Shown: positions 1 through 30,061 of the stretch, one piece after another
How positions within the stretch are numbered: the stretch's first letter is position 1
Layout of the letters: each line of letters opens with the position of its first letter
IMG/VR virus record: IMGVR_UViG_3300014914_000026
Span: 1-30,061 of that record
Strand: one strand, 5' to 3'
Length of the DNA stretch: 30,061 nt
Notes under the pieces: generated by a model
Seen by the model: the letters and a program-made list of their open reading frames with translations, nothing else
Database searches by the model: none
What the model was told of the DNA's origin: nothing
Program-made: the position numbers and the translations under genes

Positions 1-123
1 AGCGGATCAGAATGCCTCAAAATACTCGGAGCCATAGACAGAATACTAAGCCTTTTTCCCACAAAGCCATAAGCACCCAACACCAAAAGGCTTAAATACA
101 CCAAACAACACAAAATTTTTTCG
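1..123. repeat. Left inverted terminal repeat (123 bp)
   Basis: Bases 1-123 are the exact reverse complement of 29939-30061; identity ends after ...caaaattttttcg. Confidence 0.97.
83..102 (+). promoter_or_regulatory. Archaeal BRE/TATA promoter inside the left ITR
   Basis: ccaaaaggCTTAAATAcacc with TATA at 92-98, about 37 nt before the ATG at 135; near-identical copy at 18493-18512. Confidence 0.7.
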
Positions 124-134
124 AGGGAAGGGTC

Positions 135-4327: not shown

Positions 4328-4331
4328 ATTT

Positions 4332-4700: not shown

Positions 4701-4710
4701 ATTTGTCCAC

Positions 4711-9414: not shown

Positions 9415-10493
9415 AGGTATATTTTGACTACATCTCTTAATTTTTCACCTATTTTGTCCCAAGTTAAGTTGGGTCTTATGAATTTTTCTATGTGTTCCTT
9501 TACTTTTGCTTTGTATTCTTCATAATTGTTGAAGATTTCTATAGTTCTATCTACTGCTTTATCAATTATCATTTCAACCCCATATCCTATATGAATTGGA
9601 TTTGATGGTAAGACTTTATCGCTCTTTTTTGAGGGAATTAATGACCATTCAGGCATGTATTCCTCCCATGCTCCACCTTTTGCTCCTATTACTGGAACCC
9701 CTCTTGTTAGTGCTTCCATAGGTGGATGTTCCCACCCTCCTCCTCTTGATGTTAATGCGTATAGATCGCATAGATCGAAGAGTTCCATTTTTTGTTGTTC
9801 TGTAAGCCATCCAGATAATACTCTTCCTTCCATTTGGTATTTGGGTTTTCCTTTTTTGTATTCGATTGTTTCTGGGAAGTATCCTACAGCGTTTGCTGAT
9901 TTTACTACAAGTAGAACATTATTGTATTCTTTAAGTAGAGCTTGATAGTATCTTAGTAGTATGTCAAGTCCTTTCCTATATGGGCTATGAACTATGAAGC
10001 TTAGTATTAGTTTTAGGTTTCTTCGTTCCTTGAGTTTTGCTAAATGTTCAAATAGATTTGGAGGTTGTTTAGGGGCATCTATCCATTGTTCATCTATTCC
10101 ATGAGGTATTACATGAACTGGTTTTTTAACTCCTGATTTTATGTATGTTTCCTTAGATTTTTTGGATGGAACTATGAAGGCTTTTGCGTATTTAGTTAAT
10201 TTTACTGCGTATGGTGATAGTCTATCTGTATCTGCTACATCTACTCCTATTAATCCTGATGACCGACTAACTTTCTGTGCTAGTCTTTTTTCTAATTTTT
10301 GGAATAGGTAGAAGTATGGTTGTATTATTATTAGAGGTCTTGTGGTCATTGATATGTAAGGAAATGCTAGTTCATCTATTAGTTCTATTCTATAGTATTT
10401 TTTGAGTTGTTCATAATGTTTCATTCCAATTACATTAAAGCTAACTTTGTGATAAAAGGGAAACACATACCAAATTGATGTCGCTCTCATCAT
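9411..10493 (-). CDS. GT-B (GT4-like) glycosyltransferase
   Basis: IVPS..S, VIPHGID, RKGLDILL, SRGGGWEHPPMEALTRGVPVI. Confidence 0.9.
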   Translation of the reverse strand: MMRATSIWYVFPFYHKVSFNVIGMKHYEQLKKYYRIELIDELAFPYISMTTRPLIIIQPYFYLFQKLEKRLAQKVSRSSGLIGVDVADTDRLSPYAVKLTKYAKAFIVPSKKSKETYIKSGVKKPVHVIPHGIDEQWIDAPKQPPNLFEHLAKLKERRNLKLILSFIVHSPYRKGLDILLRYYQALLKEYNNVLLVVKSANAVGYFPETIEYKKGKPKYQMEGRVLSGWLTEQQKMELFDLCDLYALTSRGGGWEHPPMEALTRGVPVIGAKGGAWEEYMPEWSLIPSKKSDKVLPSNPIHIGYGVEMIIDKAVDRTIEIFNNYEEYKAKVKEHIEKFIRPNLTWDKIGEKLRDVVKIYL

Positions 10494-10828
10494 AGTCTTA
10501 TGGCATACCAGTATATTTTAACGTTATCGCTTCCAGATGGAGGAGGCGATGAATAATGAACTATTATCTCTGTGTCGGTTACTTCGTAATGGCTATATCC
10601 TGAAGCGTCTTGACTTCCAGCCCCAATTATAGCGATAGTGGGTTTGGCTGATAAGCCGTGTGGAATATGAAACTCTGTTTTGGCTCCATCTCCTGAGAAT
10701 ACTGCTAATCCACCATTTCTCTCTATTGGTGCTCTCTTATCAAGCTCCTCTAAAGCATCTACTACTGCGTTCCATTCCTCTGGTGTCAATATTTCAGTTC
10801 CTTTATATGTTAGACCCCACTTACTCAT
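10490..10828 (-). CDS. Small fibre-tip/H-lectin-like structural protein
   Basis: N-terminal GTEILTPEEWNAVVDAL; C-terminal SGDG..TEF.IPHGL...P...IYWYA beta domain typical of fibre tips. Confidence 0.6.
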   Translation of the reverse strand: MSKWGLTYKGTEILTPEEWNAVVDALEELDKRAPIERNGGLAVFSGDGAKTEFHIPHGLSAKPTIAIIGAGSQDASGYSHYEVTDTEIIVHYSSPPPSGSDNVKIYWYAIRL

Positions 10829-10833
10829 ATTTT

Positions 10834-10986
10834 CTACCTCCTCCTAAGTGGTCTTGGAGTTAAAGGTTGAGGTGATGATGTTCCTCCTACTTGTTGAGGT
10901 TGTATTTTTATATTTTGTGAGATTGATTTCTCTATCTCTTTTAGGGTTTGTATGAAGTTTTCAATGTGTTTATCCTTCTGGGACAT
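10834..10986 (-). CDS. Small hypothetical protein (50 aa, not in ORF track)
   Basis: MSQKDKHIENFIQTLKEIEKSISQNIKIQPQQVGGTSSPQPLTPRPLRRR fills the operon gap exactly. Confidence 0.55.
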   Translation of the reverse strand: MSQKDKHIENFIQTLKEIEKSISQNIKIQPQQVGGTSSPQPLTPRPLRRR

Positions 10987-10989
10987 TCT

Positions 10990-13900
10990 CTACATCCCCC
11001 TTTGTCTTCTTGCTAAGTATCTTGCTCTTCTCATTCCTCCTATGGCTTTATAGAACATTATCTCATAATCATCAAGACCCCATTCTTTAAGTGCTTCAAG
11101 TTCTTTGACAAACTCTTCTTCTGTTATTATTCCACTTGCGAAGTCTGATAGTAGCTCAGTTATGTATCTTCTGACTTCATCCATTATTGGTTTGAGCCTT
11201 ATGAACTGCTCCCACATTGCCTTCAGGACATTCTTTGTTTCTTCATCTACTGGTAGAGCGTCAATCATCTTGTATAATTGTCCGAGGGCGTATGACCTTG
11301 CTTGTGGTGAATACTCTGATAGCATCACCATTCTATCTACATCGCCTACCAGTTCTCTAAAGGCTCTATAGTGTCTTTCGTATCTTGAGGATGTCAGCAT
11401 TAGTTCTAGTTCTTTGTCTGTGTATCCGAAGTTCTTTAGCTGGTTTAGTATCTTTTTGTAGTCGTCTTCTGTTATTATGAAGTAAACATATAGGTCTTCT
11501 GCTCTTGAAATCATCTTCTTTACTTCGTCCATTATGGGTCTGAGGTCTATGTATTCAGCCCATATTGGTTGCCACTTCTCAGGTATCCTTTTAGCTTTGA
11601 CTACATCATCAAAGTATTCTCTTGCTTTTGGTATGTATTCTGATATTGTTGCGAGCATAGATGGTGTGGGTATGTATTCTCTCATTGATTGTCTTGCTTG
11701 AAGTATCATTTCTTCGAGTTCTACTCTTAGTTTCAGTATCTCCATTTCTTTATCTGTGAAGTTTATCATTTCCATGTATTCCTTAATCTTGCTTTCTATG
11801 TCCTCTGGTATCTTTATGTAGATTAAGGCTCTTCTGTAGGTGGTTAGAAGGCTCTTAATATCGTCAGCAATCGGCCTTATTTCGATATATTGCTTCCAAA
11901 TGGGCTTCCATTCATCTGGGACTAGTCTCTCGGTTAGGGCTTTGTCGATTAGGTCTTCCTTGATTACAAGGTATTCAGAGAGGGTGGCAAGCTGAGTTGG
12001 GGTGGGGATGTATTCCCTTATCGCTATGTTTACCATTCGGTCTAGAACTCCCTTTATGAACTCCTTTTCATAGTCTGTTAGTTTGGCTTTTTCTCCAACA
12101 TAATCTGCGAGTGCTTCTACATCCTCCCTTTTTACTACTCCAGTTGTAACTCTATACATCACATATCCAAGCCATCTTTGTGTCCAATACCTGACTCTTC
12201 TTATTGTGTAGATGTCTCTCCAGATGTTTAAGGAGTTTATGTATGCTGAGTAGTATTCCTCCACGAAGGCAAGTTTAAGTTCATCTGGTAGTTTTACTCC
12301 TGTTATTTTTTCATAATCCTTTGCGAAGAACTCATTTATTTTTTCGATTATGCCTGTTAGCTTCTCTTTGAACTCTTCATAGTTTTGTATGATGAATTCT
12401 GAATAGCCTCTGCTAAGGTCTCTTACTGTGTCTCTTAGTATGTCTAATGCTCTATCCATTAAGGCTCTAAGTTCAAGTAGTTTCCTTTCTGGAGGTAGAT
12501 ACATAACTGGATAGTTTACCCATCCAGTAACCCATTTGTTTTCTGAGGTGTCGAAGTATGAAACTTTGAAGCTTGCTGTTATGAAACCTGCGAGTAGTTT
12601 TTCAAGAGCGTTTATATTCCAAAAGCCTTCTTTGAATAGGTTGATGAATCCAGTCCTTAGTAGTGTTCTTTCATCTACTAAGGTGTTTATAGTTTCTGCT
12701 ACTGCTGTTAGAGGAACCCAATCTGGATGGAGACCTGTTGCCTGTAGGGTTCTTGAGAATAGTGATAGGTCGAGCTTTATTTCTGAGCTTGCTGATGGCT
12801 CTATTAGTTTCTCTCTAAAGGCTGATACTGGGGAAGTTATCTTGACTCCCCTTTCAGATAATATATTGTAGAGACCCCATCGGGTCATCCATCGCTGATC
12901 AATCTTTGTGGGTATGTCTGCGAGGGTATCTATCACTATAAGGTTGTCCGATGTGAAGCCTTTAATCCATGAGAATCTGGCATAGTCATGCCATTTCATG
13001 TAGGTCTTAAGAGCATCAAATAGCTTTGAGTATTTGAAGTTAAGTTCTATTGGTGCTATTGGTGTGAAGGCTCCTATTGTTTGTGCTACTTTCTCTAATG
13101 CTCTTCTCTCAGAGTCGGATATTGAGACCCATAGCATACCGCTTATACCTCTTGATATGAAGCTCCAGAGTCTTTCTGGGGAGGCGTATCTGAAGTGTAG
13201 GAGGTAGTAGAGATAGGCTATGTCTGGAATCATGCCTTGGGTTTGTATTGCCTTAGTAAAGTCTTCAAGTGAGTAGAATAGGTCTCTAACCATCATTCTA
13301 CATAGCTCTGAGGATGTGGGGAGCTTATGGACTAGACTCAAGGGTATGTTTCTGAATGTTCCGAATCTGTCTTTGACTTTGATCCACATATCTGGTGTGT
13401 ATTTGAAGAACCAGTCTAAAGTTACATCAGAATGTCCATAGATTGATAGGAAGAATTTTGCGATTTTGAGGATTTCCTTATACCTTTCTGTTGGTTTAAC
13501 TTCTCTGATTACACCTGTTGTTGGGTCTTTCTGTATTATGTAAGCCATGTTCCTTCTCAGGAACTCTATTATCTCATCATCTCTGGGAGCTATTATTGGG
13601 AGAACATTTCTCAACCAGTAGTTTATGAGCCTTCCAATAGGTCTTGTCAGCCATATAGCATATCCATATATCATACCTCGCCCTAGTTCATCCATCCATC
13701 TTCCAATATTAGTTGCGAATGTGTATAGTGAAGCCCCTATAATCTTTGATATGTCGATTTCAGTCTCATAGCCTATACCGAGAGGCTTTAGACTGATTTT
13801 ATGTTTCCATCCAAGTTCACCTATAGACCTTGCTACACCTCTCATTACCCATTGAGCCATTCTGAGGGGTATTTGAGCATAGAAGGGTATCCATGATACA

Positions 13901-15564
13901 GTCATGGCGTATATGCTACCTGTTGTAATAGCTTTCTTAACATAGTCTATTTTGAAGTATTCTGGGGTAGCCATTTGTTCTGCCTTAAGTATTTCCTCAT
14001 ATTTCTGTATTAGAAATTCATGTGTTTGTGATGCTATGGATTCTGGTAGTGGTTTAAGATAGTGCTCTGCTAATGGCTGTATAGCTTTACCTGACTTTTC
14101 CATTACTTGTATTGTTGAGTCCCAAAATTCCTTTGTTATTTCTGATATTATATTTGCCACACCTTTTTGTATATTTTGAAGTGAATCCCAGAAGAACTTG
14201 AGGAGATTCTGAAGACCTGATACTAATGCCTCTGACAGAGTTTTTATTTCTCCCCAGAATATATTGAATATTGATTTAAGGTTCACTCTTATCTCAGCAA
14301 ATATTTGGGGACTCATCCAAATTGATGGTAGAGAAGTTAGGGGAGTTGTAATGTATTCATTGAACCATTCTGGGAACCACGTTGGGAAGTTCATTATTGC
14401 GTTTACGAATCCTTGTGTGGTTTGGGCTAGTGAGTTAAAGCCTTTTGTTACATTGTCGATTATTTCTTTGAGTCCCTCCTGGAAGGGCTTTATTATACCT
14501 TCATTTATTGAATCAAATAATGGCTGTATTGTTGTAGCCCATGCTTTTTCTATTATATTGCTGTATATTGCTGGTGCTTCTTCTTTAAGGTTTACTAAGT
14601 ATTGAATGAATCCTGTTATGGTCTCTCCTATTTGTGATATTCCCATAATGGCTGTTACTATTCCTTCTGTTATTTGTGGGATACTTTCTAACCATCCTCT
14701 AAAGGTTTCAGTTATTGGTTCCATAAGGCTTTGTAATGTTGTGAATATTTGAGTTATTCCATTTATTATTGTGTCTGGTATTGTCGTTATTAGATTTATG
14801 ATGGGCTGTATTGCTTCGATTATAGAGTCAGGTATTGTTGATAGAAAATCTGTAACATTTGATATTAGTGATTCTATGCCAGATATACCTTTTTGTATCA
14901 TATCTGTAAGAGATTTTCCAAGTTTTTCTGTTAATGATTCGAGACTGCTGAATACTCCACTTATTGCTTCACCTATGTTGGTAATATAGTCAGATATTGA
15001 TGAAATAGCCTTTTGAATAACATTATTTAAGCTTTCTCCTAATGCCTGGAGATTATCTATAAGTCCTTGAGCAAGTTTACTTAAGCTATCAAATACACTA
15101 TTTAGACTGTCAAGAAGACTTGATGCGAGGTCTTTTAGTCCTTCAAATTGTTCTGAAACCCATTTAATGGCATCATATATAGGGTCTAGAACTACTGGTG
15201 CTATTTTTTGGACTTCACTCCAGATGTTTGTTATTGTAGAGTTTATAGTGTTTAAGATTGGTTTTATTGCTGTTTCAATGAAGGTTTCTATGCCAGATAT
15301 TATCCATGAGGCTATTGAACTAAGAATATCTGCGAACCAGTCTTTTAGTTGTCCAATTGGATCAACTATTCCTCCTACACCTGAAACTATTAGGTCTAAA
15401 TCTATTTCTTCTATTGTATATATGTCGGTTACTGTGATTGATAACGATTCCTTTTTTGGGAGATTAAGAGTAATCTGAGGTGGATTTGAGATGAGTATGT
15501 CGGATAGGATTTGGGCTGTTTTCTTTATCTCCTTGGGGTCTAACTCCTCCCTGATGGAGGACAT
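10990..15564 (-). CDS. Large minor virion protein (rudivirus terminal-fibre-like) with amphipathic helical N-terminal repeats
   Basis: 1524 aa, all-helical; C-terminal repeats REYIPTP..LAT.SEY...W..Y...RPI.D; size and position in the structural operon match the largest rudiviral virion protein. Confidence 0.6.
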   Translation of the reverse strand: MSSIREELDPKEIKKTAQILSDILISNPPQITLNLPKKESLSITVTDIYTIEEIDLDLIVSGVGGIVDPIGQLKDWFADILSSIASWIISGIETFIETAIKPILNTINSTITNIWSEVQKIAPVVLDPIYDAIKWVSEQFEGLKDLASSLLDSLNSVFDSLSKLAQGLIDNLQALGESLNNVIQKAISSISDYITNIGEAISGVFSSLESLTEKLGKSLTDMIQKGISGIESLISNVTDFLSTIPDSIIEAIQPIINLITTIPDTIINGITQIFTTLQSLMEPITETFRGWLESIPQITEGIVTAIMGISQIGETITGFIQYLVNLKEEAPAIYSNIIEKAWATTIQPLFDSINEGIIKPFQEGLKEIIDNVTKGFNSLAQTTQGFVNAIMNFPTWFPEWFNEYITTPLTSLPSIWMSPQIFAEIRVNLKSIFNIFWGEIKTLSEALVSGLQNLLKFFWDSLQNIQKGVANIISEITKEFWDSTIQVMEKSGKAIQPLAEHYLKPLPESIASQTHEFLIQKYEEILKAEQMATPEYFKIDYVKKAITTGSIYAMTVSWIPFYAQIPLRMAQWVMRGVARSIGELGWKHKISLKPLGIGYETEIDISKIIGASLYTFATNIGRWMDELGRGMIYGYAIWLTRPIGRLINYWLRNVLPIIAPRDDEIIEFLRRNMAYIIQKDPTTGVIREVKPTERYKEILKIAKFFLSIYGHSDVTLDWFFKYTPDMWIKVKDRFGTFRNIPLSLVHKLPTSSELCRMMVRDLFYSLEDFTKAIQTQGMIPDIAYLYYLLHFRYASPERLWSFISRGISGMLWVSISDSERRALEKVAQTIGAFTPIAPIELNFKYSKLFDALKTYMKWHDYARFSWIKGFTSDNLIVIDTLADIPTKIDQRWMTRWGLYNILSERGVKITSPVSAFREKLIEPSASSEIKLDLSLFSRTLQATGLHPDWVPLTAVAETINTLVDERTLLRTGFINLFKEGFWNINALEKLLAGFITASFKVSYFDTSENKWVTGWVNYPVMYLPPERKLLELRALMDRALDILRDTVRDLSRGYSEFIIQNYEEFKEKLTGIIEKINEFFAKDYEKITGVKLPDELKLAFVEEYYSAYINSLNIWRDIYTIRRVRYWTQRWLGYVMYRVTTGVVKREDVEALADYVGEKAKLTDYEKEFIKGVLDRMVNIAIREYIPTPTQLATLSEYLVIKEDLIDKALTERLVPDEWKPIWKQYIEIRPIADDIKSLLTTYRRALIYIKIPEDIESKIKEYMEMINFTDKEMEILKLRVELEEMILQARQSMREYIPTPSMLATISEYIPKAREYFDDVVKAKRIPEKWQPIWAEYIDLRPIMDEVKKMISRAEDLYVYFIITEDDYKKILNQLKNFGYTDKELELMLTSSRYERHYRAFRELVGDVDRMVMLSEYSPQARSYALGQLYKMIDALPVDEETKNVLKAMWEQFIRLKPIMDEVRRYITELLSDFASGIITEEEFVKELEALKEWGLDDYEIMFYKAIGGMRRARYLARRQRGM

Positions 15565-15839
15565 TAGGTTATCAGCCTCCTTACTTCCTCTATGCCATAA
15601 GCGAATTCTATCATTTTAAGTTTTGTTATTTCTATTTTAAGTTTGTTTTCAAGCTCTTTGAGACTTCTAACTGAGAGGGAATATGGTTTTCCTCTCATGC
15701 CTCTGTAGTGGATGGATACTACAACGTGATACCATTCCTCACCTGTTATAAGTCTAGATTTTAAAATCTCTAAAACTTCTACCAGTTCTCCGTCTATCTT
15801 TAAGAAAAATGGGGGTATTTGAAGAGTTGCCTTGGACAT
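15564..15839 (-). CDS. Hypothetical protein
   Basis: 91-aa ORF; TAATG coupling to the large virion gene. Confidence 0.7.
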   Translation of the reverse strand: MSKATLQIPPFFLKIDGELVEVLEILKSRLITGEEWYHVVVSIHYRGMRGKPYSLSVRSLKELENKLKIEITKLKMIEFAYGIEEVRRLIT

Positions 15840-15852
15840 GGCCTTCTACCCT

Positions 15853-16155
15853 TCACTCAATATAGCTTGTTGATCTCTCCTGAGATAACTTTTCCATGAC
15901 CTGTCTTAATTTCTTTACGGTCTTGAATAGCTCCTTGCTCTTGAGGGCGAGAGGACACTTCATTATCTTGGAGCAGTCGCAGGTGGAATACTCGAAGCTT
16001 AACTCATGGGTCTTCAGCAATAGCTCTTGAATTATTGTGGTTAGTTGCTCTCTGACATCTTCAGGTATCTCTATAGGGATAGTGCCAGGCGTAGGCGTCG
16101 GAGCTTCACCCTCTTCCCTAACCTTACTTTTTCTTCTTGAAGTCTTTGGAGCCAT
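15853..16155 (-). CDS. Hypothetical helical protein with CxC-x4-C motif
   Basis: 100 aa; own TATA (AAGGTTTAAATA at 16193-16204, minus strand). Confidence 0.7.
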   Translation of the reverse strand: MAPKTSRRKSKVREEGEAPTPTPGTIPIEIPEDVREQLTTIIQELLLKTHELSFEYSTCDCSKIMKCPLALKSKELFKTVKKLRQVMEKLSQERSTSYIE

Positions 16156-17387
16156 AATCTCATACCCCCATATAGGTTTAGGAGCGTTTGTCTATTTAAA
16201 CCTTGAGCTTCCCAATGGTTGAGCCACCATTCTTTGAATTGATCCTCGGTCATCGTTTTCCAGGCTTTGAATCCCCATCTGTGTCTTTTAGCTCTCCATG
16301 AGATTAATTGTAGAACTGCGTTTTTGTATTGTCTTATCCTTATTGGGTTGGATTCCTCTGGAGGTATTCTTGTTTCAACCCATTTCTCAACTATTCTTCT
16401 TTGTTGATGTAAAAGAGCATATTGATTTGTTCTATCACTTTTGTGAGGGTTTATCATTTCCTCTGGTTTATTATAGTTTGAATATGCGAAGGTTGTTAAT
16501 ATTAGTGAGTTTTTTATTATGTTCATCTTTTCTATTAGTGCTTTTAGGAATGGTGGATTCTTTTTGTCATCGATTAATTTATAGATTGATTTCTTAGGTA
16601 GAAGAAGACCATATCCCAGAGGAGTTACACCGAGAATGAATCCAAATTGTAGATGATCAAGGGTGCTAAATTTGATGTCAAGTATATTTCTCTGAGCATC
16701 CATGAAGGGTATTTTAGCAAGGTCGCCTTCAACATCTGATAGTCTGCTTTTACCTAATACTCCCAAACCAAGAACGAAGGCTTGAGATTGTGCTGAAAAT
16801 AGCATCATTAATCTATTGAATATGTTGTCGTCGGTTACTTCTATCATTTCAAGGTAATCCGCTATTTGCTCCATTGTCTTGATCCAGCTTTCATCTGGTT
16901 TTCTTAAAAGTCTAAGTCTGTGGAAAGTTGCTCTTAGGAATTCTCTTGCCACTATAGGGTCATATAGCCCTCTTGCGTATGGAGTAATACCGTAGATGGC
17001 TTTTTCTCCTCTTCCTATGAGTAAATCTTCTTGGAATTCTTCCTTGAAGTTTTCTATAATGTATTCTTTGAAGTCTGTCATCCACATATACAATCTCTCG
17101 AAGTGTATTGGTTTGAATTTTCCCCATATACCCTGGAGTAATTCATCAAAGTTGGGGAGTTCAAATTCAAAACCAATATTGTATGGTTCATAGTCTATTG
17201 GAAGAATGTTGTAGAGTAGTCCAAGTCCAAGTTGCGATAAGTCAAAGGGTGAAAGATATAACCATACATATTCTGCGAAGTATGGGTCAATGTCAAGTAG
17301 TCTTTGAAAGGTTAGAGAGATAGCACTATCTGATAGAGTTTTGGCGTGATACTTCTTTTTTATGTCTGAAATTCTCCTTTCTCTCAT
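16071..17387 (-). CDS. Putative minor virion protein
   Basis: 438-aa ORF in the capsid/GT operon; repeated G(I/V)TP(Y/L) motifs; role inferred from context only. Confidence 0.5.
   Translation of the reverse strand: MRERRISDIKKKYHAKTLSDSAISLTFQRLLDIDPYFAEYVWLYLSPFDLSQLGLGLLYNILPIDYEPYNIGFEFELPNFDELLQGIWGKFKPIHFERLYMWMTDFKEYIIENFKEEFQEDLLIGRGEKAIYGITPYARGLYDPIVAREFLRATFHRLRLLRKPDESWIKTMEQIADYLEMIEVTDDNIFNRLMMLFSAQSQAFVLGLGVLGKSRLSDVEGDLAKIPFMDAQRNILDIKFSTLDHLQFGFILGVTPLGYGLLLPKKSIYKLIDDKKNPPFLKALIEKMNIIKNSLILTTFAYSNYNKPEEMINPHKSDRTNQYALLHQQRRIVEKWVETRIPPEESNPIRIRQYKNAVLQLISWRAKRHRWGFKAWKTMTEDQFKEWWLNHWEAQGLNRQTLLNLYGGMRLWLQRLQEEKVRLGKRVKLRRLRLALSL
16193..16204 (-). promoter_or_regulatory. BRE/TATA promoter for 15853-16155
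   Basis: AAGGTTTAAATA 38 nt upstream of the ATG; identical 12-mer at 22110-22121. Confidence 0.6.
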
Positions 17388-17388
17388 G

Positions 17389-18435
17389 TTAATCTCTCCA
17401 GAATTTAAGGAATTGGAGGTATATTTTCTTTACGTCGAAGCTTTCAGCATGTTTTATAAGTTCTTTTTTTCTGGCTTCGTATTCTTGTCTGTTTTTGGTG
17501 TATAATTCGTAGGCATTTAAAATTTGATCAGCCATTTCTTTTGGATTGTATTCGTGAATGAGGTATAGTATTCCATCTCCAAGGTCTTTATATTGTTCAT
17601 CTTGGATTGATACTGGATAGTTTAGTTTGGGGTGAGCTATCTCTGTTAGGGGTTCATATTTTGGGTATATTACTGGAATTCCGAAGGCTTGGGCTTCAAG
17701 GACTGGTAAGCCAAATCCCTCGCATAGACTGGGCTGGATATAGAAGTCTAATGCTCCTATAAGTGAGAGTATTTCTTCTCTTGCCAGTTTTCCGAATCTT
17801 GTTAGAATTAGGGTGTTTTCAACATCAAAGAAGGCGTTTTTACCTGTTGCGTTTGTGAAGATGACGAATCCTATGTCTTTAGTTTTGCTATTAACTATTT
17901 CTATTGCCTGTGAAAGTCTATCAAGCCCTTTTCTTGGATGACCTGATGCTACTGTTCCGAATATCACTTTTTTATTGAGTTTATCTTTAATCATTTGTTT
18001 TTGGTCTGGTATTAGCTTCTTTGAGAATTCTATCATATCCATGTTTACTCCATGTGGAACCATGCCTATTACTTTTAGTCCTACTCTCTTAAGCATTTTT
18101 GTTGTGAATTTACTATTGGATATGAAGTAGCATCCTTGTTTTATCCATTTTGAGATTAGATGTTGTTTGGGTTCTCCCTCTACAGTTGTGTATATTAGTG
18201 TTGGTATGTTTAGGAGGTTGTATTCTCTTGCGAGTAGGAACCAGCTATGTGCGTATAATGGGTCGCATGTTATGAATATTATTGCTCTTTGAAATAGGTT
18301 TGGTGCTTCATGTTCTGATACCATGTAGTCTTTGAAGTATATTTTGAGTCCTGCTTTTTTAAATGCGTATGCTATATCTTGACCTACTGTTTTTAGAGAT
18401 GGGGCATAACTTGTTATAATTCCATAGCGAGTCAT
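17389..18435 (-). CDS. GT4 glycosyltransferase
   Basis: NSKFT, VPHGVN, RKGLD, PSLCEGFGLPVLEAQAFGIPVI (E-x7-E). Confidence 0.93.
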   Translation of the reverse strand: MTRYGIITSYAPSLKTVGQDIAYAFKKAGLKIYFKDYMVSEHEAPNLFQRAIIFITCDPLYAHSWFLLAREYNLLNIPTLIYTTVEGEPKQHLISKWIKQGCYFISNSKFTTKMLKRVGLKVIGMVPHGVNMDMIEFSKKLIPDQKQMIKDKLNKKVIFGTVASGHPRKGLDRLSQAIEIVNSKTKDIGFVIFTNATGKNAFFDVENTLILTRFGKLAREEILSLIGALDFYIQPSLCEGFGLPVLEAQAFGIPVIYPKYEPLTEIAHPKLNYPVSIQDEQYKDLGDGILYLIHEYNPKEMADQILNAYELYTKNRQEYEARKKELIKHAESFDVKKIYLQFLKFWRD

Positions 18436-18492
18436 GGCTATATGGAGTTAGGGTAATAAGGAAATTTAAGGGTTTCAGGTTGGAGGACTAGT

Positions 18493-18512
18493 CCAAAAGG
18501 CTTATATAGACC
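18493..18512 (+). promoter_or_regulatory. BRE/TATA promoter of the TopoVIA-like gene
   Basis: ccaaaaggcttatatagacc, 18/20 identical to the ITR promoter; preceded by the palindrome GGACTAGTCC. Confidence 0.7.
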
Positions 18513-18543
18513 TTTGTGTATTGTTATAGATGGAGGTGGATGG

Positions 18544-19536
18544 ATGAGGGGGAATAGGGAAGCTATCCTAACGGAGGTCGATAATGCTATAAGGCTCTTT
18601 GGTGCTCAGGGTGTAAAGCCTACATTGAGAACTTTGTTCTACTATCTGGTTAGCAAGAATATCATACCTAACACCAGATCAGCATATAAGAGGCTGTCAA
18701 GGATTCTGGTTAAGGCGAGAAAGGAGGGGAGATATGCCTGGGATTTCCTTGAGGATAAGACAAGGGTGGTTCTCGGATACCGATCAGACCATAGATTTAG
18801 CGATGATGTCTTAGAAGACTTTGAGGAGAGATTAAAGTATAAGCTTGAGAGCATAGACATAAGTGAGATACTTAGTGAGCTATTTGACTGGATGATGCCT
18901 ACAATAGATGTTGAAATGTGGGCGGAGCAACCTATTATACCAGAGATATGGATAGAGAAGGAGGCTTTGTCTTCGACGATATATAATTGGACAAGAGACT
19001 TGAAGGTGAGAATAAGAGTCAATCGTGGTTACAGTAGTTGGACATTCATATACAACAATGTTGAAGACTTGAAGACTACACTATTGAGGCATGACAAGGT
19101 GGTTATACTATATCTTGGAGACTTAGACCCAAGCGGAGTGGATATTCAGAGATTTCTTGAGGAAGCCTTAGAATACTTTGGACTTGACAGAGAGAAGGTT
19201 GAGTTAAGGAGGGTTGCTGTTACACCAGAGCAAGTTGAGGAGTTTGATCTACCTCCAAGACCAGAGGATGCGGAGACTTTAGCTAAGTTACAGAGAGATA
19301 CAAGAAGTAAGAGCTATACTTATGACTATATAGTAGAGCTTGATAGCTTAGTTGCCTATGTTCCAGAGGAGTTTAGAAACATAGTTAGAAGTGCTATCTA
19401 TGACTGCTGGGATAAAGATATATACAACAAACTTAAAGACAGAGCTAAGGAGCTAAGCAATAAAGCTTTCAAGCTTTTAGTAGATTATAAGGAGAAGGCG
19501 AGAGAAAAGATATTGAATATGTTAAGAGAGGAGTGA
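18544..19536 (+). CDS. Stand-alone Spo11/TopoVI-A-like protein (5Y-CAP + TOPRIM; Mini-A-like)
   Basis: TLRTLFYYL (candidate catalytic Tyr), EIWIEK, RGYSS, YLGDLDPSGVDI (DxD), ELDSL; start reassigned to MRGNRE after a GGAGGTGG RBS. Confidence 0.8.
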   Translation: MRGNREAILTEVDNAIRLFGAQGVKPTLRTLFYYLVSKNIIPNTRSAYKRLSRILVKARKEGRYAWDFLEDKTRVVLGYRSDHRFSDDVLEDFEERLKYKLESIDISEILSELFDWMMPTIDVEMWAEQPIIPEIWIEKEALSSTIYNWTRDLKVRIRVNRGYSSWTFIYNNVEDLKTTLLRHDKVVILYLGDLDPSGVDIQRFLEEALEYFGLDREKVELRRVAVTPEQVEEFDLPPRPEDAETLAKLQRDTRSKSYTYDYIVELDSLVAYVPEEFRNIVRSAIYDCWDKDIYNKLKDRAKELSNKAFKLLVDYKEKAREKILNMLREE

Positions 19537-19547
19537 AAAACCAATTA

Positions 19548-19565
19548 TTTTTTTATATAAAAAAA
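19548..19565. terminator. Bidirectional oligo-T terminator
   Basis: TTTTTTT-ATAT-AAAAAAA perfect palindrome between two convergent genes. Confidence 0.7.
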
Positions 19566-19587
19566 CTGGGTTCTCTAAGGGTTTTTC

Positions 19588-19612
19588 TATGTGGAAGAGG
19601 TATCAGGCAAAG
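19588..19612. repeat. 25-bp inverted-repeat arm in the capsid 3'UTR (partner at 19942-19966)
   Basis: tatgtggaagaggtatcaggcaaag versus reverse complement of ctttgcctgatacttcttccacata: 24/25. Confidence 0.92.
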
Positions 19613-19617
19613 GATGT

Positions 19618-19992
19618 TTAGTATGGCATCACCCAGCCTGCGATGACCTGTATAATCTCATCGCAGACTGAGGGATCGAGGCCATAGGCGTTCACATAGT
19701 AGCTCTTGAGACCAGAGCTGATCTTCTTGCCAGCATCACCCTTCTGGCGGACTATATGCCTCAGAAGGGCGAGGCCGAAGGCGAGGTAGGTCGCCCTCAT
19801 ACCACCAGTAATGCCATACTCATCGAGGATCGGCCTCACCAAGTCCCTGGCGGTGGCAACCATGTTTAGACCTTCCTGTGCTCTATCGACGGCGATGCTC
19901 TGGACATCCGTGAACCTAGTCCCTATGACGGTGGGGTTGAACTTTGCCTGATACTTCTTCCACATATCCAGACCAGTCTTATAGAGTGGCAT
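19618..19992 (-). CDS. Major capsid protein, SIRV2/Adnaviria fold
   Basis: KYQAKFNPTV...ILDEYGITGGMRATYLAFGL...GLKSYYVNAYGLDPSV..II.VI.G aligns by eye with rudivirus MCP (KWQAKF..NPTV...LTQYGITGPNRAIYQGFGL...GLKGYYISAFNANPQV); GGAGGTGA RBS. Confidence 0.92.
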   Translation of the reverse strand: MPLYKTGLDMWKKYQAKFNPTVIGTRFTDVQSIAVDRAQEGLNMVATARDLVRPILDEYGITGGMRATYLAFGLALLRHIVRQKGDAGKKISSGLKSYYVNAYGLDPSVCDEIIQVIAGWVMPY

Positions 19993-20070
19993 CTCTCATC
20001 TTCACCTCCAAATCCTATTCTGTGAAATGAAGGATGCTCTTTAAATATAAGGAATTTACTTAAAATAAAT

Positions 20071-20670
20071 TTGAGGAGTGTGATGATGAAGCCTGAGGAT
20101 GAAATGGTTAAAATGAATGAATCTTCAAATACGCTTGAAACTCCAGATAAAGTTAGATTTGACAATATTAACATTCATAGTCTTGAAGATTGGATTGATT
20201 ACAGTATAAAGTGGAGGGCTTATAGGGATGTAGTGGATTATATACAGAGAGTTCTTGAGATTACTAATAGGTATTTTGAGTGGAGGATTCGTGAGGTTAT
20301 AAAGAATGGGATTATTGTTGATTATAATAGGTATGTGAAAGTTGATAGCTATAAGGTTACTTTAACTATTGAGGTCTGTATCCATGAGGATACTGTTGAG
20401 GAGTTGGCTAAGTTCTATAAGTTCCTTAAAAGTAGGATTGAAAGTCAGAGAAGACTTAAGAGAGGTAGGCTTAGAGGCTCTGAGTTCAAGTTTGTAGCTG
20501 ATGAGGAGATAGAGTCGCCTGTGGAGAGGGCTTTGAGGGAGAGTGAAGAGGAGCTTGATAGGGTGGAGGAGGAGGCTGAGGAAAAAACAGATAAGGGAAA
20601 TTGGTATAAGTTAATCCCAGTAGGGGAGTCTCATGGAGAGGAGAGAGACGCTTCCGAGGATGATGGTTAA
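20071..20670 (+). CDS. Hypothetical protein with acidic C-terminus
   Basis: About 195-aa ORF divergent from the MCP; start probably at one of the ATGs near 20083-20104. Confidence 0.65.
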   Translation: MRSVMMKPEDEMVKMNESSNTLETPDKVRFDNINIHSLEDWIDYSIKWRAYRDVVDYIQRVLEITNRYFEWRIREVIKNGIIVDYNRYVKVDSYKVTLTIEVCIHEDTVEELAKFYKFLKSRIESQRRLKRGRLRGSEFKFVADEEIESPVERALRESEEELDRVEEEAEEKTDKGNWYKLIPVGESHGEERDASEDDG

Positions 20671-20800
20671 TAGGCTTGAGATTGTTATTCCCAGTAGAAT
20701 CTGGGAGCGGTTAGAGAAGATTGAAAAGAAGGCTGGGATTAGGAAGGAAGATATTTTAATGAGGGCTTTAATCAAGGTTATAGAGGAGTTTGAGGGTTAG
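20633..20800 (+). CDS. Ribbon-helix-helix protein (55 aa, not in ORF track)
   Basis: RLEIVIPSRIWERLEKIEKKAGIRKEDILMRALIKVIEE is an RHH pattern. Confidence 0.7.
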   Translation: MERRETLPRMMVNRLEIVIPSRIWERLEKIEKKAGIRKEDILMRALIKVIEEFEG

Positions 20801-20802
20801 CC

Positions 20803-21114
20803 ATGAGCCTCCAGAGGAAGATTATGACTCTTATCGCTCCTATACCTGATCCGACTACAAGAATGGATGTAGCTTCCACTATAAATTATCTGTTTAGCGT
20901 CTATAATACTGGGGTAGTTAATGATGATGAAGTCAAGGATGCTTTATTTGAGGTTTGTAGGGATGTCTTGGAGGCTACTAATCCTGATTTAGGGATGGAG
21001 GAGATTAGGAAGAGAGCGGAGACTTTGGCTAAGGAATTTATGAGTGCTTTTAAGTTGGAGAGTTCTGTGCGGAGGATGATGAGTAGATTTAGGGGTAGAT
21101 TTATGCCTCTTTAG
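20803..21114 (+). CDS. Helical hypothetical protein
   Basis: 103-aa ORF 2 nt after the RHH stop. Confidence 0.7.
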   Translation: MSLQRKIMTLIAPIPDPTTRMDVASTINYLFSVYNTGVVNDDEVKDALFEVCRDVLEATNPDLGMEEIRKRAETLAKEFMSAFKLESSVRRMMSRFRGRFMPL

Positions 21115-21292
21115 ATTTCTTTAGTTTTACTATTGCCTTTATGATTATGTAGAGTAGGATGGATAATATAGTTGGGACTATGATTAGACCTATGATGGGG
21201 AGGAGAACTAGTCCAAACCATCCGAGTTTTATGAGTGGGTATATGAATAGTAGGTAGAGGATGGCGTATATGATGTTTGGGATGTTTATCAT
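21101..21292 (-). CDS. Small two-TM membrane protein
   Basis: Almost entirely hydrophobic with a basic tail; GAGGTG RBS. Confidence 0.6.
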   Translation of the reverse strand: MINIPNIIYAILYLLFIYPLIKLGWFGLVLLPIIGLIIVPTILSILLYIIIKAIVKLKKSKEA

Positions 21293-21296
21293 TTTG

Positions 21297-21608
21297 TTAC
21301 ACCTCTATGAAGGTGTATCTTCCTTTTCTCTTTATAAATACTTTGGTTTTTACTGTGTATTGTCCCTTGAATTGGGCTAAGTCTTTGAATTTTTCTTTTA
21401 GTTTTGAGAGGTCTCTTGGAGCTTCCCTATAGCCCTTAACTTGGACTAACCAGATTTCTTTTGTATCTGGAAAGAAGGCAATGAGGTCTGCTGGGGTTCG
21501 ACTTCTTGAGCTTCTTATGACAAGGTTTGCTCCAAGTTTTTTAAGGTCGTCTTTGGCTCTTAGTTCTATTATGTATCCTTTTTGGTATGATGTTCTTTTT
21601 GGTGTCAT
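21297..21608 (-). CDS. hjc: Archaeal Holliday-junction resolvase (PD-(D/E)xK)
   Basis: KGY..E......L...G..VIRS..S..PADLIA......LVQVK. Confidence 0.85.
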   Translation of the reverse strand: MTPKRTSYQKGYIIELRAKDDLKKLGANLVIRSSRSRTPADLIAFFPDTKEIWLVQVKGYREAPRDLSKLKEKFKDLAQFKGQYTVKTKVFIKRKGRYTFIEV

Positions 21609-21609
21609 T

Positions 21610-22077
21610 TTATCTTCCCTCTGTTCTTACGTATTTTACTGTGGCTATTCCAAGTGCTCCGAGGGTTCTCATTAGTATGTAGTATGCTAACTTTTGCTTG
21701 GTTTTGAGGTAGTATTTTGAGATGTAGATTTTTTGGTTGTGTAGGTCAAACCATATTGGTATTCTTCCTTTTGTTCTTGAGTATTTACATTTTCCGTGTT
21801 TGTCGTAGCGTGGTTGGGTTAGTATGTAGAGGATTTTGTTGCCTACTTTCTTTTTGCCTATGTAGAATTGTCTGTTGGGGAATCGCTTGTTTAGATTGTT
21901 TGCGTAGTTTATGAGGTCTTGGAGGGTTATTCTTTTGGAGTTTGGCTTGGGGACTAGTCTGAATATTTGGGTGTATCTACCCATTTGACCCTTTCCCTTG
22001 ATCTCTGGGGTGAAGTCAGCCCAGAGTTCGAGGAGGGTGATGCTTCGGTTCTTGCCGTAGGGGATTATCAGCACCAT
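21610..22077 (-). CDS. Basic hypothetical protein (possible nucleic-acid binding)
   Basis: 155 aa, K/R/Y-rich, own TATA at 22110-22121. Confidence 0.65.
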   Translation of the reverse strand: MVLIIPYGKNRSITLLELWADFTPEIKGKGQMGRYTQIFRLVPKPNSKRITLQDLINYANNLNKRFPNRQFYIGKKKVGNKILYILTQPRYDKHGKCKYSRTKGRIPIWFDLHNQKIYISKYYLKTKQKLAYYILMRTLGALGIATVKYVRTEGR

Positions 22078-22135: not shown

Positions 22136-22981
22136 CTAAAATGAGGGAATTAACTCAATCCACTCTGGCTCCTTATCGATGTAGTCTGGGAGAGCTTTGT
22201 AGAAGTCGAGGAGGGAGCATCCCCACCACCAGTTGTGGAATAGACCCTGATACCAGGGTCTTCCCTGTTTTATGTTGTTTAGGCAGAAGTAAAACCAATG
22301 GGTGGCTACTTGTTCTTTGAATTGCCTTAATGATATGGTTTTTGGGATGTATAACCAATGTGGTTCTGATAGAGCAAGCATGTAGTAATCTTTTGCCAGA
22401 TAGCTTTGGATTCTCTGTCTTGAGCCTTTTATTGGGAATCCTCTTTCTTCGTGATGTTCTATTACCATGATTGGTTTACATTTTTGGATTAGACCGTATG
22501 CTCCATATATGACGTTCTCTTCATGTCCTTCAACATCTATTTTTATTACATGACATTCGTCTATTAGGTCATCTAACCTCCAGACTGGGACTTCTATGGC
22601 TTCTTCTTTTTGGTCTGTTTTTACAAGGTGGCTTTGTGCTCCTTGTTGTATTAGGTAACCTGTTCCTGTGAAGTTTGATACTGCTGTTTCCATTATTTCT
22701 ATGTTTTCAATTTCATTTAGGGCTATGTTTAGTTTTAATACTGCTATGTTTGATGGGTCTGGTTCTATGGCTATGACTTCTTTATAGTATTTTGCCATTC
22801 TAATGGCATACATTCCATCACATGCTCCTACATCTACAAAGATTTTGTTTGGTGAGGCTACTTGTTTTAGTGTTTCTATTACTGTGAGTTCATGCGGTCT
22901 TAGGGGGTCGAGGTCTGAGGGGGTGGGATTATCTGTGGGTATAGCCCATTTAAATCCATCCCAGCTTTTACGGATTTTCAT
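22136..22981 (-). CDS. FkbM-family SAM methyltransferase
   Basis: FVDVGACDG, VIAIEPDP, RLDD, IKIDVEGHE..V..G, IEHH. Confidence 0.9.
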   Translation of the reverse strand: MKIRKSWDGFKWAIPTDNPTPSDLDPLRPHELTVIETLKQVASPNKIFVDVGACDGMYAIRMAKYYKEVIAIEPDPSNIAVLKLNIALNEIENIEIMETAVSNFTGTGYLIQQGAQSHLVKTDQKEEAIEVPVWRLDDLIDECHVIKIDVEGHEENVIYGAYGLIQKCKPIMVIEHHEERGFPIKGSRQRIQSYLAKDYYMLALSEPHWLYIPKTISLRQFKEQVATHWFYFCLNNIKQGRPWYQGLFHNWWWGCSLLDFYKALPDYIDKEPEWIELIPSF

Positions 22982-29929: not shown

Positions 29930-29938
29930 GTCTATCCC

Positions 29939-30061
29939 CGAAAAAATTTTGTGTTGTTTGGTGTATTTAAGCCTTTTGGTGTTGGGTGCTTATGGCTTTG
30001 TGGGAAAAAGGCTTAGTATTCTGTCTATGGCTCCGAGTATTTTGAGGCATTCTGATCCGCT
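29939..30061. repeat. Right inverted terminal repeat (123 bp)
   Basis: Exact reverse complement of 1-123. Confidence 0.97.

What the first reader, a model, noticed from the sequence alone, without database searches (positions are those of the whole stretch)
18467..19584. Stand-alone Spo11/TopoVIA-like (Mini-A-like) cassette inserted against the capsid operon
Seen: an intact 5Y-CAP (R..FYY) + TOPRIM (EK, DxD) protein with no B-subunit/GHKL ATPase in the genome. It lies antisense between MCP and GT (adjacent in SIRV2), has a promoter 18/20 identical to the ITR promoter and its own terminator, and is flanked by a 9-bp direct repeat taagggttt (18467-18475, 19576-19584; weak, the 9-mer occurs elsewhere). 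Known: such enzymes cut dsDNA through 5'-phosphotyrosine links. Inference: in a linear genome lacking Rep or polymerase it could, with Hjc, resolve replication intermediates or create protein-capped ends, recruit host TopoVI-B, or attack host/competitor DNA.
Basis: partly seen in the sequence, partly recalled or inferred. Interest (0 to 1): 0.75.

Follow-up and report, generated by a model that had tools for sequence, protein, structure and literature searches.

The report
Mobile Mini-A topoisomerase-like gene in rod virus
A deep-sea archaeal rod-shaped virus carries an intact, stand-alone "Mini-A" DNA-cutting enzyme gene (a short relative of topoisomerase VI subunit A / Spo11) that was inserted as an optional cassette between its coat-protein and glycosyltransferase genes; the enzyme family is already known, but its function is not, and here it is clearly dispensable and movable.

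Summary
Window 18544-19536 (+) encodes an intact 330-aa Mini-A protein. It has RxxFY (Y33), Toprim E138 and D193-x-D195-xxG, and a VELDSL T2BI box. There is no ATPase partner in the genome. The AlphaFold model's best solved-structure match is Top6A. The 18/20 match to the ITR promoter, the T7-ATAT-A7 terminator and the 9-bp direct repeat are all real.

The window is a complete 30,061-bp linear genome (126-nt ITRs) of a rudivirus-like virus. I recovered about 50 relatives of it from metagenomes. In about 35 of them, coat protein (MCP) and glycosyltransferase (GT) lie 24-120 bp apart, so the site is empty. Two empty sites carry one copy of the 9-mer, in the context the window has on each side. 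That supports an insertion with target duplication.

A sister genome (28,549 bp) carries the same promoter plus Mini-A cassette directly inside its ITR. A third complete genome (~29.5 kb) has no Mini-A. A second rod-virus lineage shows the same presence/absence pattern.

Most likely it is a Tyr/Mg2+ DNA breakage-rejoining enzyme that assists viral replication or recombination. This is a new member of a known family in a new viral context.

The parts
18544..19536 (+). Mini-A CDS (330 aa plus stop). Y33 codon 18640-18642; R29 18628-18630; E138 18955-18957; D193 19120-19122; D195 19126-19128; T2BI box VELDSL, E265 19336-19338 and D267 19342-19344
   Evidence: (PHROG 6247, E=1e-49)
18493..18512 (+). 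BRE/TATA-like promoter 20-mer, 18/20 identical to the ITR promoter; TATA lies 41 nt before the ATG
18531..18538 (+). Shine-Dalgarno-like GGAGGTGG, 5 nt before ATG 18544
   Evidence: read from sequence
19548..19565 (.). T7-ATAT-A7 palindrome: an oligo-T terminator for Mini-A (+) and, read on the other strand, for the convergent MCP gene
   Evidence: I5
18467..18475 (+). Left copy of the 9-bp direct repeat TAAGGGTTT. On the minus strand it is the BRE/TATA half of the GT promoter (AAACCCTTAAATTTC), the same context as the L045 empty site
19576..19584 (+). Right copy of the 9-bp direct repeat. On the minus strand its upstream context (TAGAAAAACCCTTA) matches the MCP-side context of the L045 empty site
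19618..19992 (-). Major capsid protein (SIRV2-type), the upstream neighbour of the insertion site
17389..18435 (-). GT1 glycosyltransferase (SIRV2 ORF335-like), the downstream neighbour of the insertion site
83..102 (+). ITR-borne promoter copy driving the first gene (135-605); its mirror copy is at 29960-29979 (-)
1..126 (.). Left inverted terminal repeat (the right arm is 29936-30061), showing that the window is a complete linear genome
21297..21608 (-). Hjc-like PD-(D/E)xK nuclease. It is found in 11 clade loci, but tblastn did not detect it in the L024-like complete genome.

Best explanation
Shown:
- The gene encodes a catalytically intact member of the Mini-A subfamily of type IIB topoisomerase A-subunit-like proteins (5Y-CAP plus Toprim, no ATPase partner).
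- In this clade of hydrothermal rudivirus-like viruses it is an accessory gene. It travels with its own strong BRE/TATA promoter and oligo-T terminator.
- In the window lineage it landed in the MCP-GT spacer, inside the GT promoter. That spacer is a recurrent hotspot for gene gain.
- The landing left a 9-bp duplication of the target, TAAGGGTTT.
- In a sister genome the same promoter-gene unit sits immediately inside the ITR.

Inferred mechanism:
- A homodimer uses Tyr33 and a Mg2+ ion held by E138/D193/D195 to break DNA through 5'-phosphotyrosyl links, and possibly reseals it, without ATP-driven strand passage.
- It is expressed together with the ITR-proximal genes.
- It assists viral DNA replication or recombination, for example by making breaks that seed recombination-dependent replication or by processing concatemeric or branched intermediates. 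It gives a fitness benefit but is not required.
For: Identity:
- PHROG 6247 'DNA topoisomerase', E=1e-49.
- 29-33% identity over more than 85% of its length to phage proteins annotated as DNA topoisomerase.
- All family motifs are conserved in essentially all 99 homologues: 99/99 for the Toprim and T2BI residues, 98/99 for R29 and Y33.
- AF2 model pLDDT 82. Best PDB folds are Top6A 1d3y, E=1.3e-4, and the M. mazei topo VI-DNA complexes, aligned over the full length.
- No ATPase in the genome and no conserved neighbour in five archaeal contexts.

Accessory and mobile:
- 54 clade loci share conserved synteny. About 35 have MCP-GT spacers of 24-120 bp.
- The window alone has Mini-A in that spacer.
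- Single-copy 9-mer sites in L043 and L045 match the window's two flanks.
- Genome 000030 is complete (123-nt ITRs). Its homologous promoter plus Mini-A starts at the inner edge of the ITR.
- The L024-like complete genome has no Mini-A.
- L005 has Mini-A in a 3.2-kb block that is missing from L064/L065.
- The same slot holds other inserts: a LAGLIDADG endonuclease, a wHTH protein and extra MCP copies.

Function:
- In Pseudomonas phage PaMx25 the homologue lies between a DNA ligase and a Sak4 annealase, near primase, RNase H, a Cas4-like exonuclease and a helicase.
- The promoter is shared with the ITR-proximal genes.
Against: - No biochemical data exist for any Mini-A (PMC7671362; PMC8185306; PMC11894792).
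- The replication/recombination role rests on gene neighbourhood in distant phages.
- In phage Sano the neighbours are uninformative.
- Dispensability and ITR-proximal, terminal-arm placement also fit host-takeover or anti-competitor genes.
- The 9-bp repeat alone is not significant (P about 0.06-0.09).
- There are no terminal inverted repeats and no recombinase gene, so the insertion mechanism is unknown.
- The 8-mer AAGGGTTT also precedes the cassette in 000030, so microhomology-mediated recombination could mimic a target duplication.
- Only the central ~20 kb of most relatives was held, so Mini-A may sit in unsampled arms of some of them.
Confidence: 0.5

Rival explanations
1. Essential replication or terminus enzyme. 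Mini-A would replace the missing Rep: it nicks or cuts at the ITRs, caps the ends with protein, or resolves replication intermediates together with the Hjc-like nuclease.
For: - No Rep or polymerase was detectable.
- In 000030 the gene abuts the ITR.
- The promoter is shared with the ITR.
- Skuldviruses, which also lack Rep, carry Mini-A and prompted the same idea (bioRxiv 10.1101/2021.07.29.453957).
Against: - A complete sibling genome with ITRs lacks Mini-A.
- No Mini-A was found in about 50 clade loci apart from the window and 000030.
- L064/L065 lack it at the position where L005 has it.
- The ITRs of the three genomes are unrelated in sequence, whereas the Mini-A proteins are 68% identical.
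Confidence: 0.08
2. Weapon against host or rival DNA. An early-expressed nuclease would break the host chromosome or co-infecting elements, with the viral genome protected by its coat, by modification or by lack of target sites.
For: - The gene is accessory and sits in variable or terminal regions, where rudiviruses keep host-interaction genes.
- It has a strong early-type promoter.
- It acts alone without an ATPase.
Against: - The T2BI box, which the family's describers propose restrains uncontrolled cleavage (PMC7671362), has its ELD core invariant in 99/99 sequences. Such restraint fits a controlled enzyme rather than a degradative nuclease.
- Phage homologues sit in replication modules.
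- There is no PADLOC or defence-model hit.
Confidence: 0.2
3. Selfish homing-type cassette. Mini-A itself would cut TAAGGGTTT-like sites in Mini-A-less genomes during co-infection, and repair would copy the gene in.
For: - It is a free-standing gene with its own promoter and terminator, flanked by a 9-bp repeat.
- A sibling genome has a genuine LAGLIDADG homing endonuclease in the same spacer.
- An imperfect repeat of the motif also brackets the gene in 000030.
- Distribution is patchy, and Mini-A identity does not track MCP identity: L005 versus L011 is 70% for Mini-A but 31% for MCP.
Against: - Topo VI/Spo11-type cuts have a 2-nt stagger, not 9 nt (established knowledge of the family).
- In L001, L003 and L005 the gene is embedded in operons without such repeats.
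- Phage lineages keep it stably in replication modules.
- The motif is a common word in this genome.
Confidence: 0.1
4. Bona fide type IIB topoisomerase that borrows the host Top6B ATPase.
For: The full A-subunit fold is shared with Top6A. Archaeal hosts encode Topo VI (PMC8185306).
Against: - Only 28 residues precede R29.
- The family lacks the N-terminal 5Y-CAP part that binds Top6B (PMC7671362).
- Most Mini-A proteins are in phages of bacteria that lack Topo VI.
Confidence: 0.05

Closest known systems
Mini-A subfamily of type IIB topoisomerase A-like proteins (Takahashi et al. 2020, PMC7671362); PHROG 6247
   Same: About 300-330 aa. RxxFY tyrosine, Toprim E and DxDxxG, and a C-terminal T2BI box. 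No B subunit. Virus-encoded. Direct sequence homology to the phage members.
   Different: The T2BI box reads VELDSL rather than xWELDAL. In my 99-sequence set, V occurs in 72 and W in 27. There is an extra helical insert of about 30 aa between 5Y-CAP and Toprim, and a 7-aa insert, both specific to the hydrothermal archaeal clade. The host element is a rudivirus-like rod virus (realm Adnaviria); I found no report of Mini-A in such viruses.
Topoisomerase VI subunit A / Spo11
   Same: Best structural match over the full length is Top6A: 1d3y E=1.3e-4, then 9o8p and 9o0g. The catalytic residues are the same.
   Different: No sequence-level match to the PDB or to Pfam. It lacks the N-terminal Top6B-binding segment. 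It has no B subunit or TopoVIBL-like partner.
Topo mini-A of Asgard skuldviruses and wyrdvirus WyrdV4 (bioRxiv 10.1101/2021.07.29.453957)
   Same: Mini-A in archaeal viruses that lack recognisable replication proteins. Patchy distribution and apparent exchange between viruses and other mobile elements.
   Different: Those are tailless icosahedral or spindle-type viruses with circular genomes, for which rolling-circle initiation was proposed. Here the genome is linear with ITRs and the gene is demonstrably dispensable within the clade.
Free-standing homing endonuclease genes in viral intergenic regions (for example the LAGLIDADG gene in sibling locus L019)
   Same: Solitary gene in the same MCP-GT spacer. 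Presence/absence polymorphism between close relatives. An enzyme that breaks DNA.
   Different: The fold and chemistry are unrelated (Tyr transesterase plus Toprim). No homing has been demonstrated. In other viruses the gene is embedded in operons.
JetD/MksG nuclease of Wadjet
   Same: A Toprim domain combined with a winged-helix/CAP-like domain, and derived from the topo VI-A lineage (my knowledge, not tested beyond model scans).
   Different: No PADLOC hit, no JetABC neighbours, and no JetD structures among the top 50 Foldseek matches. The catalytic tyrosine is strictly conserved here.

Membership tests
Mini-A (type IIB topoisomerase A-like, Takahashi 2020) | Short (~300 aa) A-subunit homologue that lacks the N-terminal part of 5Y-CAP | tested here: met
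   330 aa. The catalytic Tyr is at position 33, with only one helix before R29. The fold aligns to Top6A over its full length.
Mini-A (type IIB topoisomerase A-like, Takahashi 2020) | RxxY/FY with a conserved catalytic tyrosine | tested here: met
   R29-T-L-F-Y33. R and Y are each present in 98/99 homologues.
Mini-A (type IIB topoisomerase A-like, Takahashi 2020) | Toprim metal-binding residues E and DxDxxG | tested here: met
   E138 and D193-L-D195-P-S-G198, each in 99/99.
Mini-A (type IIB topoisomerase A-like, Takahashi 2020) | C-terminal T2BI box xWELDAL, which discriminates Mini-A from Topo VI and Topo VIII | tested here: met
   The window has I-V-E-L-D-S-L. E265 and D267 are in 99/99 and L266 in 97/99. 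W is replaced by V in 72/99 sequences, including the whole archaeal clade; the phage members keep W. This is a variant of the motif, not a loss.
Mini-A (type IIB topoisomerase A-like, Takahashi 2020) | No B subunit or GHKL ATPase in the element; encoded by a virus or provirus | tested here: met
   Pfam scans of 30 ORFs found nothing, and the only large ORFs are structural. There is no conserved neighbour in other contexts. The genome has a rudiviral MCP and ITRs.
Mini-A (type IIB topoisomerase A-like, Takahashi 2020) | Monophyly with Mini-A, separate from Topo VI-A and Topo VIII, in a supported phylogeny | not tested
A neighbour-joining tree without support values shows only that the archaeal clade is a distinct branch among Mini-A homologues.
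Topo VI subunit A / Spo11 | 5Y-CAP plus Toprim fold | tested here: met
   Foldseek top hits are 1d3y_B, 9o8p_A and 9o0g, probability 1.00, TM 0.41-0.49.
Topo VI subunit A / Spo11 | Sequence membership (Pfam TP6A_N/Toprim models) and the N-terminal B-subunit-binding segment | tested here: not met
   No Pfam or NCBIfam hit. No PDB sequence hit, even with a profile. The N-terminus is truncated.
Topo VI subunit A / Spo11 | Works with a GHKL B subunit (Top6B / TopoVIBL) | tested here: not met
   None is encoded in the virus. Use of a host subunit cannot be tested with these tools.
JetD (Wadjet) nuclease | Match to JetD models and linkage to JetA, JetB and JetC | tested here: not met
   PADLOC returned 0 families. 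There are no SMC-like neighbours.
Transposable or homing cassette | Target-site duplication, with an empty site in relatives | tested here: met
   A 9-bp direct repeat flanks the insert. One copy is present in the L043 and L045 spacers, in matching left and right contexts. Caveat: the repeat alone has P about 0.06-0.09.
Transposable or homing cassette | Terminal inverted repeats, or its own recombinase or transposase | tested here: not met
   No inverted repeat pairs the two cassette ends. Mini-A is the only gene in the insert.
Rudiviridae-like rod virus (genome context) | SIRV2-type MCP, GT next to MCP, terminal-fibre and large structural proteins, linear genome with ITRs | tested here: met
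   The replication module of Sulfolobales rudiviruses (Rep ORF119c, gp17-19) was not detected.

The most novel reading that the evidence does not exclude
Mini-A would be a self-propagating DNA-breaking gene. The enzyme cuts TAAGGGTTT-like sites, which are promoter or ITR-junction sequences, in co-infecting rod viruses that lack it. Recombinational repair then copies the promoter-gene-terminator unit into the break. This would explain the 9-bp flanking repeat, the two different locations in sister genomes, the shared slot with a LAGLIDADG homing endonuclease, and the mismatch between Mini-A and capsid divergence. It would be the first homing-type mobile element driven by a Spo11/topo VI-A-like tyrosine enzyme.
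Probability: 0.1. Interest if true: 0.8.

Novelty: new member of a known kind. Interest (0 to 1): 0.45.

Why it matters
Mini-A is a large family: 4,949 clusters at 50% identity score E<=1e-3. It is found in viruses of both bacteria and archaea, and its function has been an open question since 2020.

This locus adds a natural experiment. Three complete sibling genomes carry the gene at the MCP-GT spacer, at the ITR edge, or not at all, and a second lineage shows the same polymorphism. That rules out a universally essential replication role in these viruses. It also shows that the gene moves as a promoter-gene-terminator unit.

The work also uncovers a clade of at least 50 rudivirus-like genomes from metagenomes (the sample type was not looked up), with a defined hotspot for gene gain between MCP and GT. 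I found no description of this clade in the papers searched.

If Mini-A were shown to drive its own mobility, or to seed recombination-dependent replication, it would link Spo11-type DNA breakage to virus biology.

Tried and rejected
- Pfam, NCBIfam and PADLOC scans of the protein gave nothing.
- PDB sequence searches with the single protein and with a 47-sequence profile gave only noise.
- The BFVD fold search gave only Toprim primases.
- Megablast of 20 kb of the window against phage records found no match.
- IMG/VR scans with the MCP found only the window and one relative. The metagenome scan was needed to find the clade.
- I tested whether the Mini-A promoter of 000030 lies inside its ITR. 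It does not; the ITR is 123 nt and ends just before the cassette.
- I looked for a conserved partner gene ('Mini-B') within 4 kb of Mini-A in seven contexts and found none.
- I looked for terminal inverted repeats at the cassette ends and found none.
- The upstream regions of four other archaeal Mini-A genes are not homologous to the window's promoter.
- The 7-mer GAAGGGT next to the window's left ITR looked suggestive, but it is a frequent word (10 occurrences against 4 expected), so I dropped it.
- Maximum-likelihood tree building failed twice for technical reasons. An unsupported neighbour-joining tree was used only descriptively.
- One literature query was wasted on 'minia', which matched 'miniature'.
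- Two 'mini-A plus Rudiviridae' paper hits were false matches to 'mini-array'.
Full report
**1. What the window is**

The window has 126-nt inverted terminal repeats at its two ends. It is identical to IMG/VR contig UViG_3300014914_000026, which is 30,061 bp. It is therefore a complete linear genome.

Several genes tie it to the rudiviruses:
- ORF 19618-19992 (-) is a SIRV2-type major capsid protein. It hits Pfam PF12193 at E=2e-21 and is 36-39% identical to rudiviral MCPs.
- ORFs 17389-18435 and 9411-10493 are GT1 glycosyltransferases like SIRV2 ORF335 and ORF356.
- The 1524-aa protein shares its C-terminus with SIRV2 ORF1070.

There is no nucleotide-level match to any deposited phage or archaeal virus record. 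None of the Sulfolobales rudivirus replication genes (Rep ORF119c, gp17-19, Hjc ORF121) is detectable by tblastn. Pfam scans of 30 ORFs show no Rep, polymerase or GHKL ATPase.

**2. The observation**

- The ORF runs 18544-19536 and encodes 330 aa; the public gene call has the same length.
- It reads R29-T-L-F-Y33, E138 in IEKEAL, D193-L-D195-P-S-G198, and V-E265-L-D267-S-L near the C-terminus.
- In 99 homologues R29 and Y33 are present in 98, and E138, D193, D195, G198, E265 and D267 in all 99.
- The 20-mer CCAAAAGGCTTAWATASACC occurs only in the two ITRs and 31 nt upstream of the Mini-A ATG. Expected by chance is 0.03. The TATA-to-ATG spacing is 42 versus 41 nt.
- Looser versions of the same BRE/TATA word lie upstream of several other genes: 13 matches against 3.9 expected. 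It is therefore the virus's promoter consensus, and the ITR and Mini-A copies are the best examples of it.
- A T7-ATAT-A7 palindrome at 19548-19565 sits between the convergent Mini-A and MCP genes.
- TAAGGGTTT flanks the unit at 18467-18475 and 19576-19584.
- On its own, a 9-bp repeat between these two short flanks arises in 6-9% of shuffled or genome-sampled controls.

**3. What the protein is**

- It matches PHROG 6247 ('DNA topoisomerase') at E=1e-49 over its full length.
- It matches 78 phage genomes at 29-33% identity, including Pseudomonas NP1/PaMx25-like, Xylella Sano/Salvo, Flavobacterium and Brevundimonas phages.
- These belong to the Mini-A subfamily defined by Takahashi et al. (PMC7671362). 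Its features are about 300 aa, no N-terminal Top6B-binding part of 5Y-CAP, RxxY/FY, E plus DxDxxG, the T2BI box xWELDAL, and no B subunit.
- The window protein meets each of these. One variation is that W is V in the T2BI box, as in 72 of 99 sequences in my set.
- An AlphaFold2 model built from 47 homologues (pLDDT 82, pTM 0.70) finds Top6A as its best solved match over the full length. The hits are 1d3y at E=1.3e-4 and the 2026 M. mazei topo VI-DNA complexes, followed only by Toprim domains of primases.
- Sequence searches of the PDB find nothing. JetD and other defence models do not match.
- The family is large: 4,949 clusters at 50% identity score E<=1e-3.
- Close homologues at 50-68% identity are numerous in metagenomes. 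The few that carry names are labelled Thermoprotei or Archaeoglobus.

**4. Relatives and the insertion**

A degenerate-pattern scan of metagenomes with an MCP alignment returned 54 loci of the same clade, most with MCP identity of 64-82%.

They share the synteny p155 - Hjc-like p103b - p103a - MCP - GT - p438 - p1524 - GT. In about 35 loci the MCP stop and the GT start are 24-120 bp apart, so the site is empty. Only the window has Mini-A there.

Two empty sites carry a single copy of the 9-mer (written here on the MCP strand):
- L045 has CTAGAAAACCCTTAAATTTC.
- L043 (= 000030) has CCTAAACCCTTAATACCC.

The window's MCP-side flank, ATAGAAAAACCCTTA, matches the left context of L045. Its GT-side flank, AAACCCTTAAATTTC, matches the right context of L045 exactly. 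This is the pattern expected of an insertion that duplicated 9 bp of the GT promoter.

The spacer is also a general hotspot for gene gain:
- L019 carries a LAGLIDADG homing endonuclease there (Pfam E=1.7e-17). L020 has the same spacer empty.
- L026 carries a wHTH protein.
- L035 and L052 carry extra MCP-like genes.
- L046, L048 and L036 carry other small genes.

**5. Three complete genomes, three states**

Contig 000030 (28,549 bp) has perfect 123-nt ITRs, with core genes 43-67% identical to the window's (MCP 67%, p438 60%, GT 43%) and unrelated arms.
- Its Mini-A is 68% identical to the window's.
- It is the first gene inside one ITR. The ITR ends ...GAGAAGG and the unique sequence continues GTTTGG..., so the 8-mer AAGGGTTT spans the junction.
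- The following ~45 nt, which include the BRE/TATA, are homologous to window 18467-18512.
- Downstream of that gene lies TTAAGGGTA, an imperfect second copy of the motif.

The L024-like virus was reconstructed as two overlapping loci that reach both ends. It is about 29.5 kb with 123-nt ITRs.
- Its MCP is 77% identical to the window's.
- It has no Mini-A at all.

In a second, more distant lineage with two MCP paralogues, L005 has Mini-A inside a 3.2-kb block. That block is absent at the same position in L064 and L065, whose MCPs are 89% identical to L005's.

Mini-A identity does not track MCP identity. L005 versus 000030 is 70% for Mini-A but 31% for MCP. No neighbouring gene is shared among five archaeal contexts.

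**6. Interpretation**

Shown:
- This is an intact Mini-A enzyme gene.
- It is accessory in this virus clade.
- It moves together with its promoter and terminator.

Inferred:
- By homology with Top6A and Spo11, a dimer attacks DNA with Tyr33 and Toprim-bound Mg2+ to form 5'-phosphotyrosyl breaks. Without an ATPase it cannot drive strand passage.
- In phage PaMx25 the homologue lies between an ATP-dependent DNA ligase and a Sak4 annealase, next to primase, RNase H, a Cas4-like exonuclease and a helicase.
- I therefore favour a helper role in replication or recombination, either by making breaks that seed recombination-dependent replication or by processing concatemers. My confidence in that specific mechanism is only about 0.35.
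- Rival readings remain open: an anti-host or anti-competitor nuclease, or a selfish homing-type cassette.
- Borrowing the host's Top6B is unlikely, because the binding segment is missing (PMC7671362) and most family members are in phages of bacteria.

Reviews up to December 2024 state that Mini-A function is unexplored (PMC8185306; PMC11894792). I found no paper linking Mini-A to rod-shaped viruses of the realm Adnaviria.

**7. Limits**

- Most relatives were held only for about 20 kb around the MCP, so Mini-A could lie in unsampled arms of some of them.
- The Hjc-like assignment of ORF 21297-21608 rests on marginal scores: PDB 1gef at E=0.049, and the Pfam Hjc model in 3 of 8 homologues, best E=2.8e-4.
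- The tree is neighbour-joining without support values.
- The promoter and terminator are sequence inferences.
- The insertion mechanism is unknown. There are no terminal inverted repeats and no recombinase gene, and microhomology-mediated recombination could mimic a target duplication.

Noticed in passing
L013-L066 (metagenome loci); window 9411-22077: A clade of at least 50 rudivirus-like genomes recovered from JGI metagenomes, for which I found no description in the papers searched. It has a conserved structural and glycosylation core, variable arms, and ITRs of about 123-126 nt that are unrelated in sequence between siblings.
   Followed up: partly
L019:823-1770 versus L020 spacer 7564-7625: A LAGLIDADG homing endonuclease (Pfam E=1.7e-17) sits between MCP and GT in L019. 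The whole L020-type spacer and a repeat of the last MCP codons (TACTAA) are retained on the GT side.
   Followed up: partly
L035:10511-10792; L052:477-974: Extra short MCP-like ORFs (weak PF12193 hits) lie between MCP and GT in some relatives. These may be tandem capsid-gene duplications.
   Followed up: no
L005:7379-7741 and 9408-9965: This Mini-A-bearing virus has two MCP paralogues (HMM E=1e-44 and 3e-7), as lipothrixvirus-like viruses do. Its Mini-A lies in a 3.2-kb block (2376-5485) that is absent from L064 and L065.
   Followed up: partly
L011:1225-1245: A perfect 12-nt palindrome ACCCTTAAGGGT lies just downstream of a BRE/TATA-like promoter after the 000030 Mini-A gene. It contains the AAGGGT core of the window's flanking repeat in both orientations.
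   Followed up: no
window 21297-21608 (-): A small PD-(D/E)xK protein with the Hjc signature (E15, R32-S33, D41), except that Q56-V-K58 replaces E-x-K. It is found in 11 clade loci, but tblastn does not detect it in the L024-like genome.
   Followed up: partly
window 18642-19022 (-): A 126-aa antisense ORF lies inside the Mini-A gene. Its apparent 'homologues' in L003 and L005 are just the opposite strand of conserved Mini-A codons, so it is probably not a gene.
   Followed up: partly
L117:631-3605: The Mini-A-less sibling genome carries an AAA_5 (MoxR-like) ATPase of 481 aa and a 509-aa protein in its terminal arm. Neither has a counterpart in the window.
   Followed up: no
window 29775-29929 (-): A short ORF starts about 8 nt inside the right ITR and is driven by the ITR promoter copy. 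The ORF listing at 70 aa did not show it, and it mirrors gene 135-605 at the left end.
   Followed up: no
window 22136-22981 (-); 3620-4327 (-); 5368-8952 (+): An FkbM-type methyltransferase (E=1e-21), a glycine-rich-domain protein (PF21722, E=6e-18) and a 1194-aa DUF2341 protein. These are probably virion-modification and terminal-fibre components.
   Followed up: no
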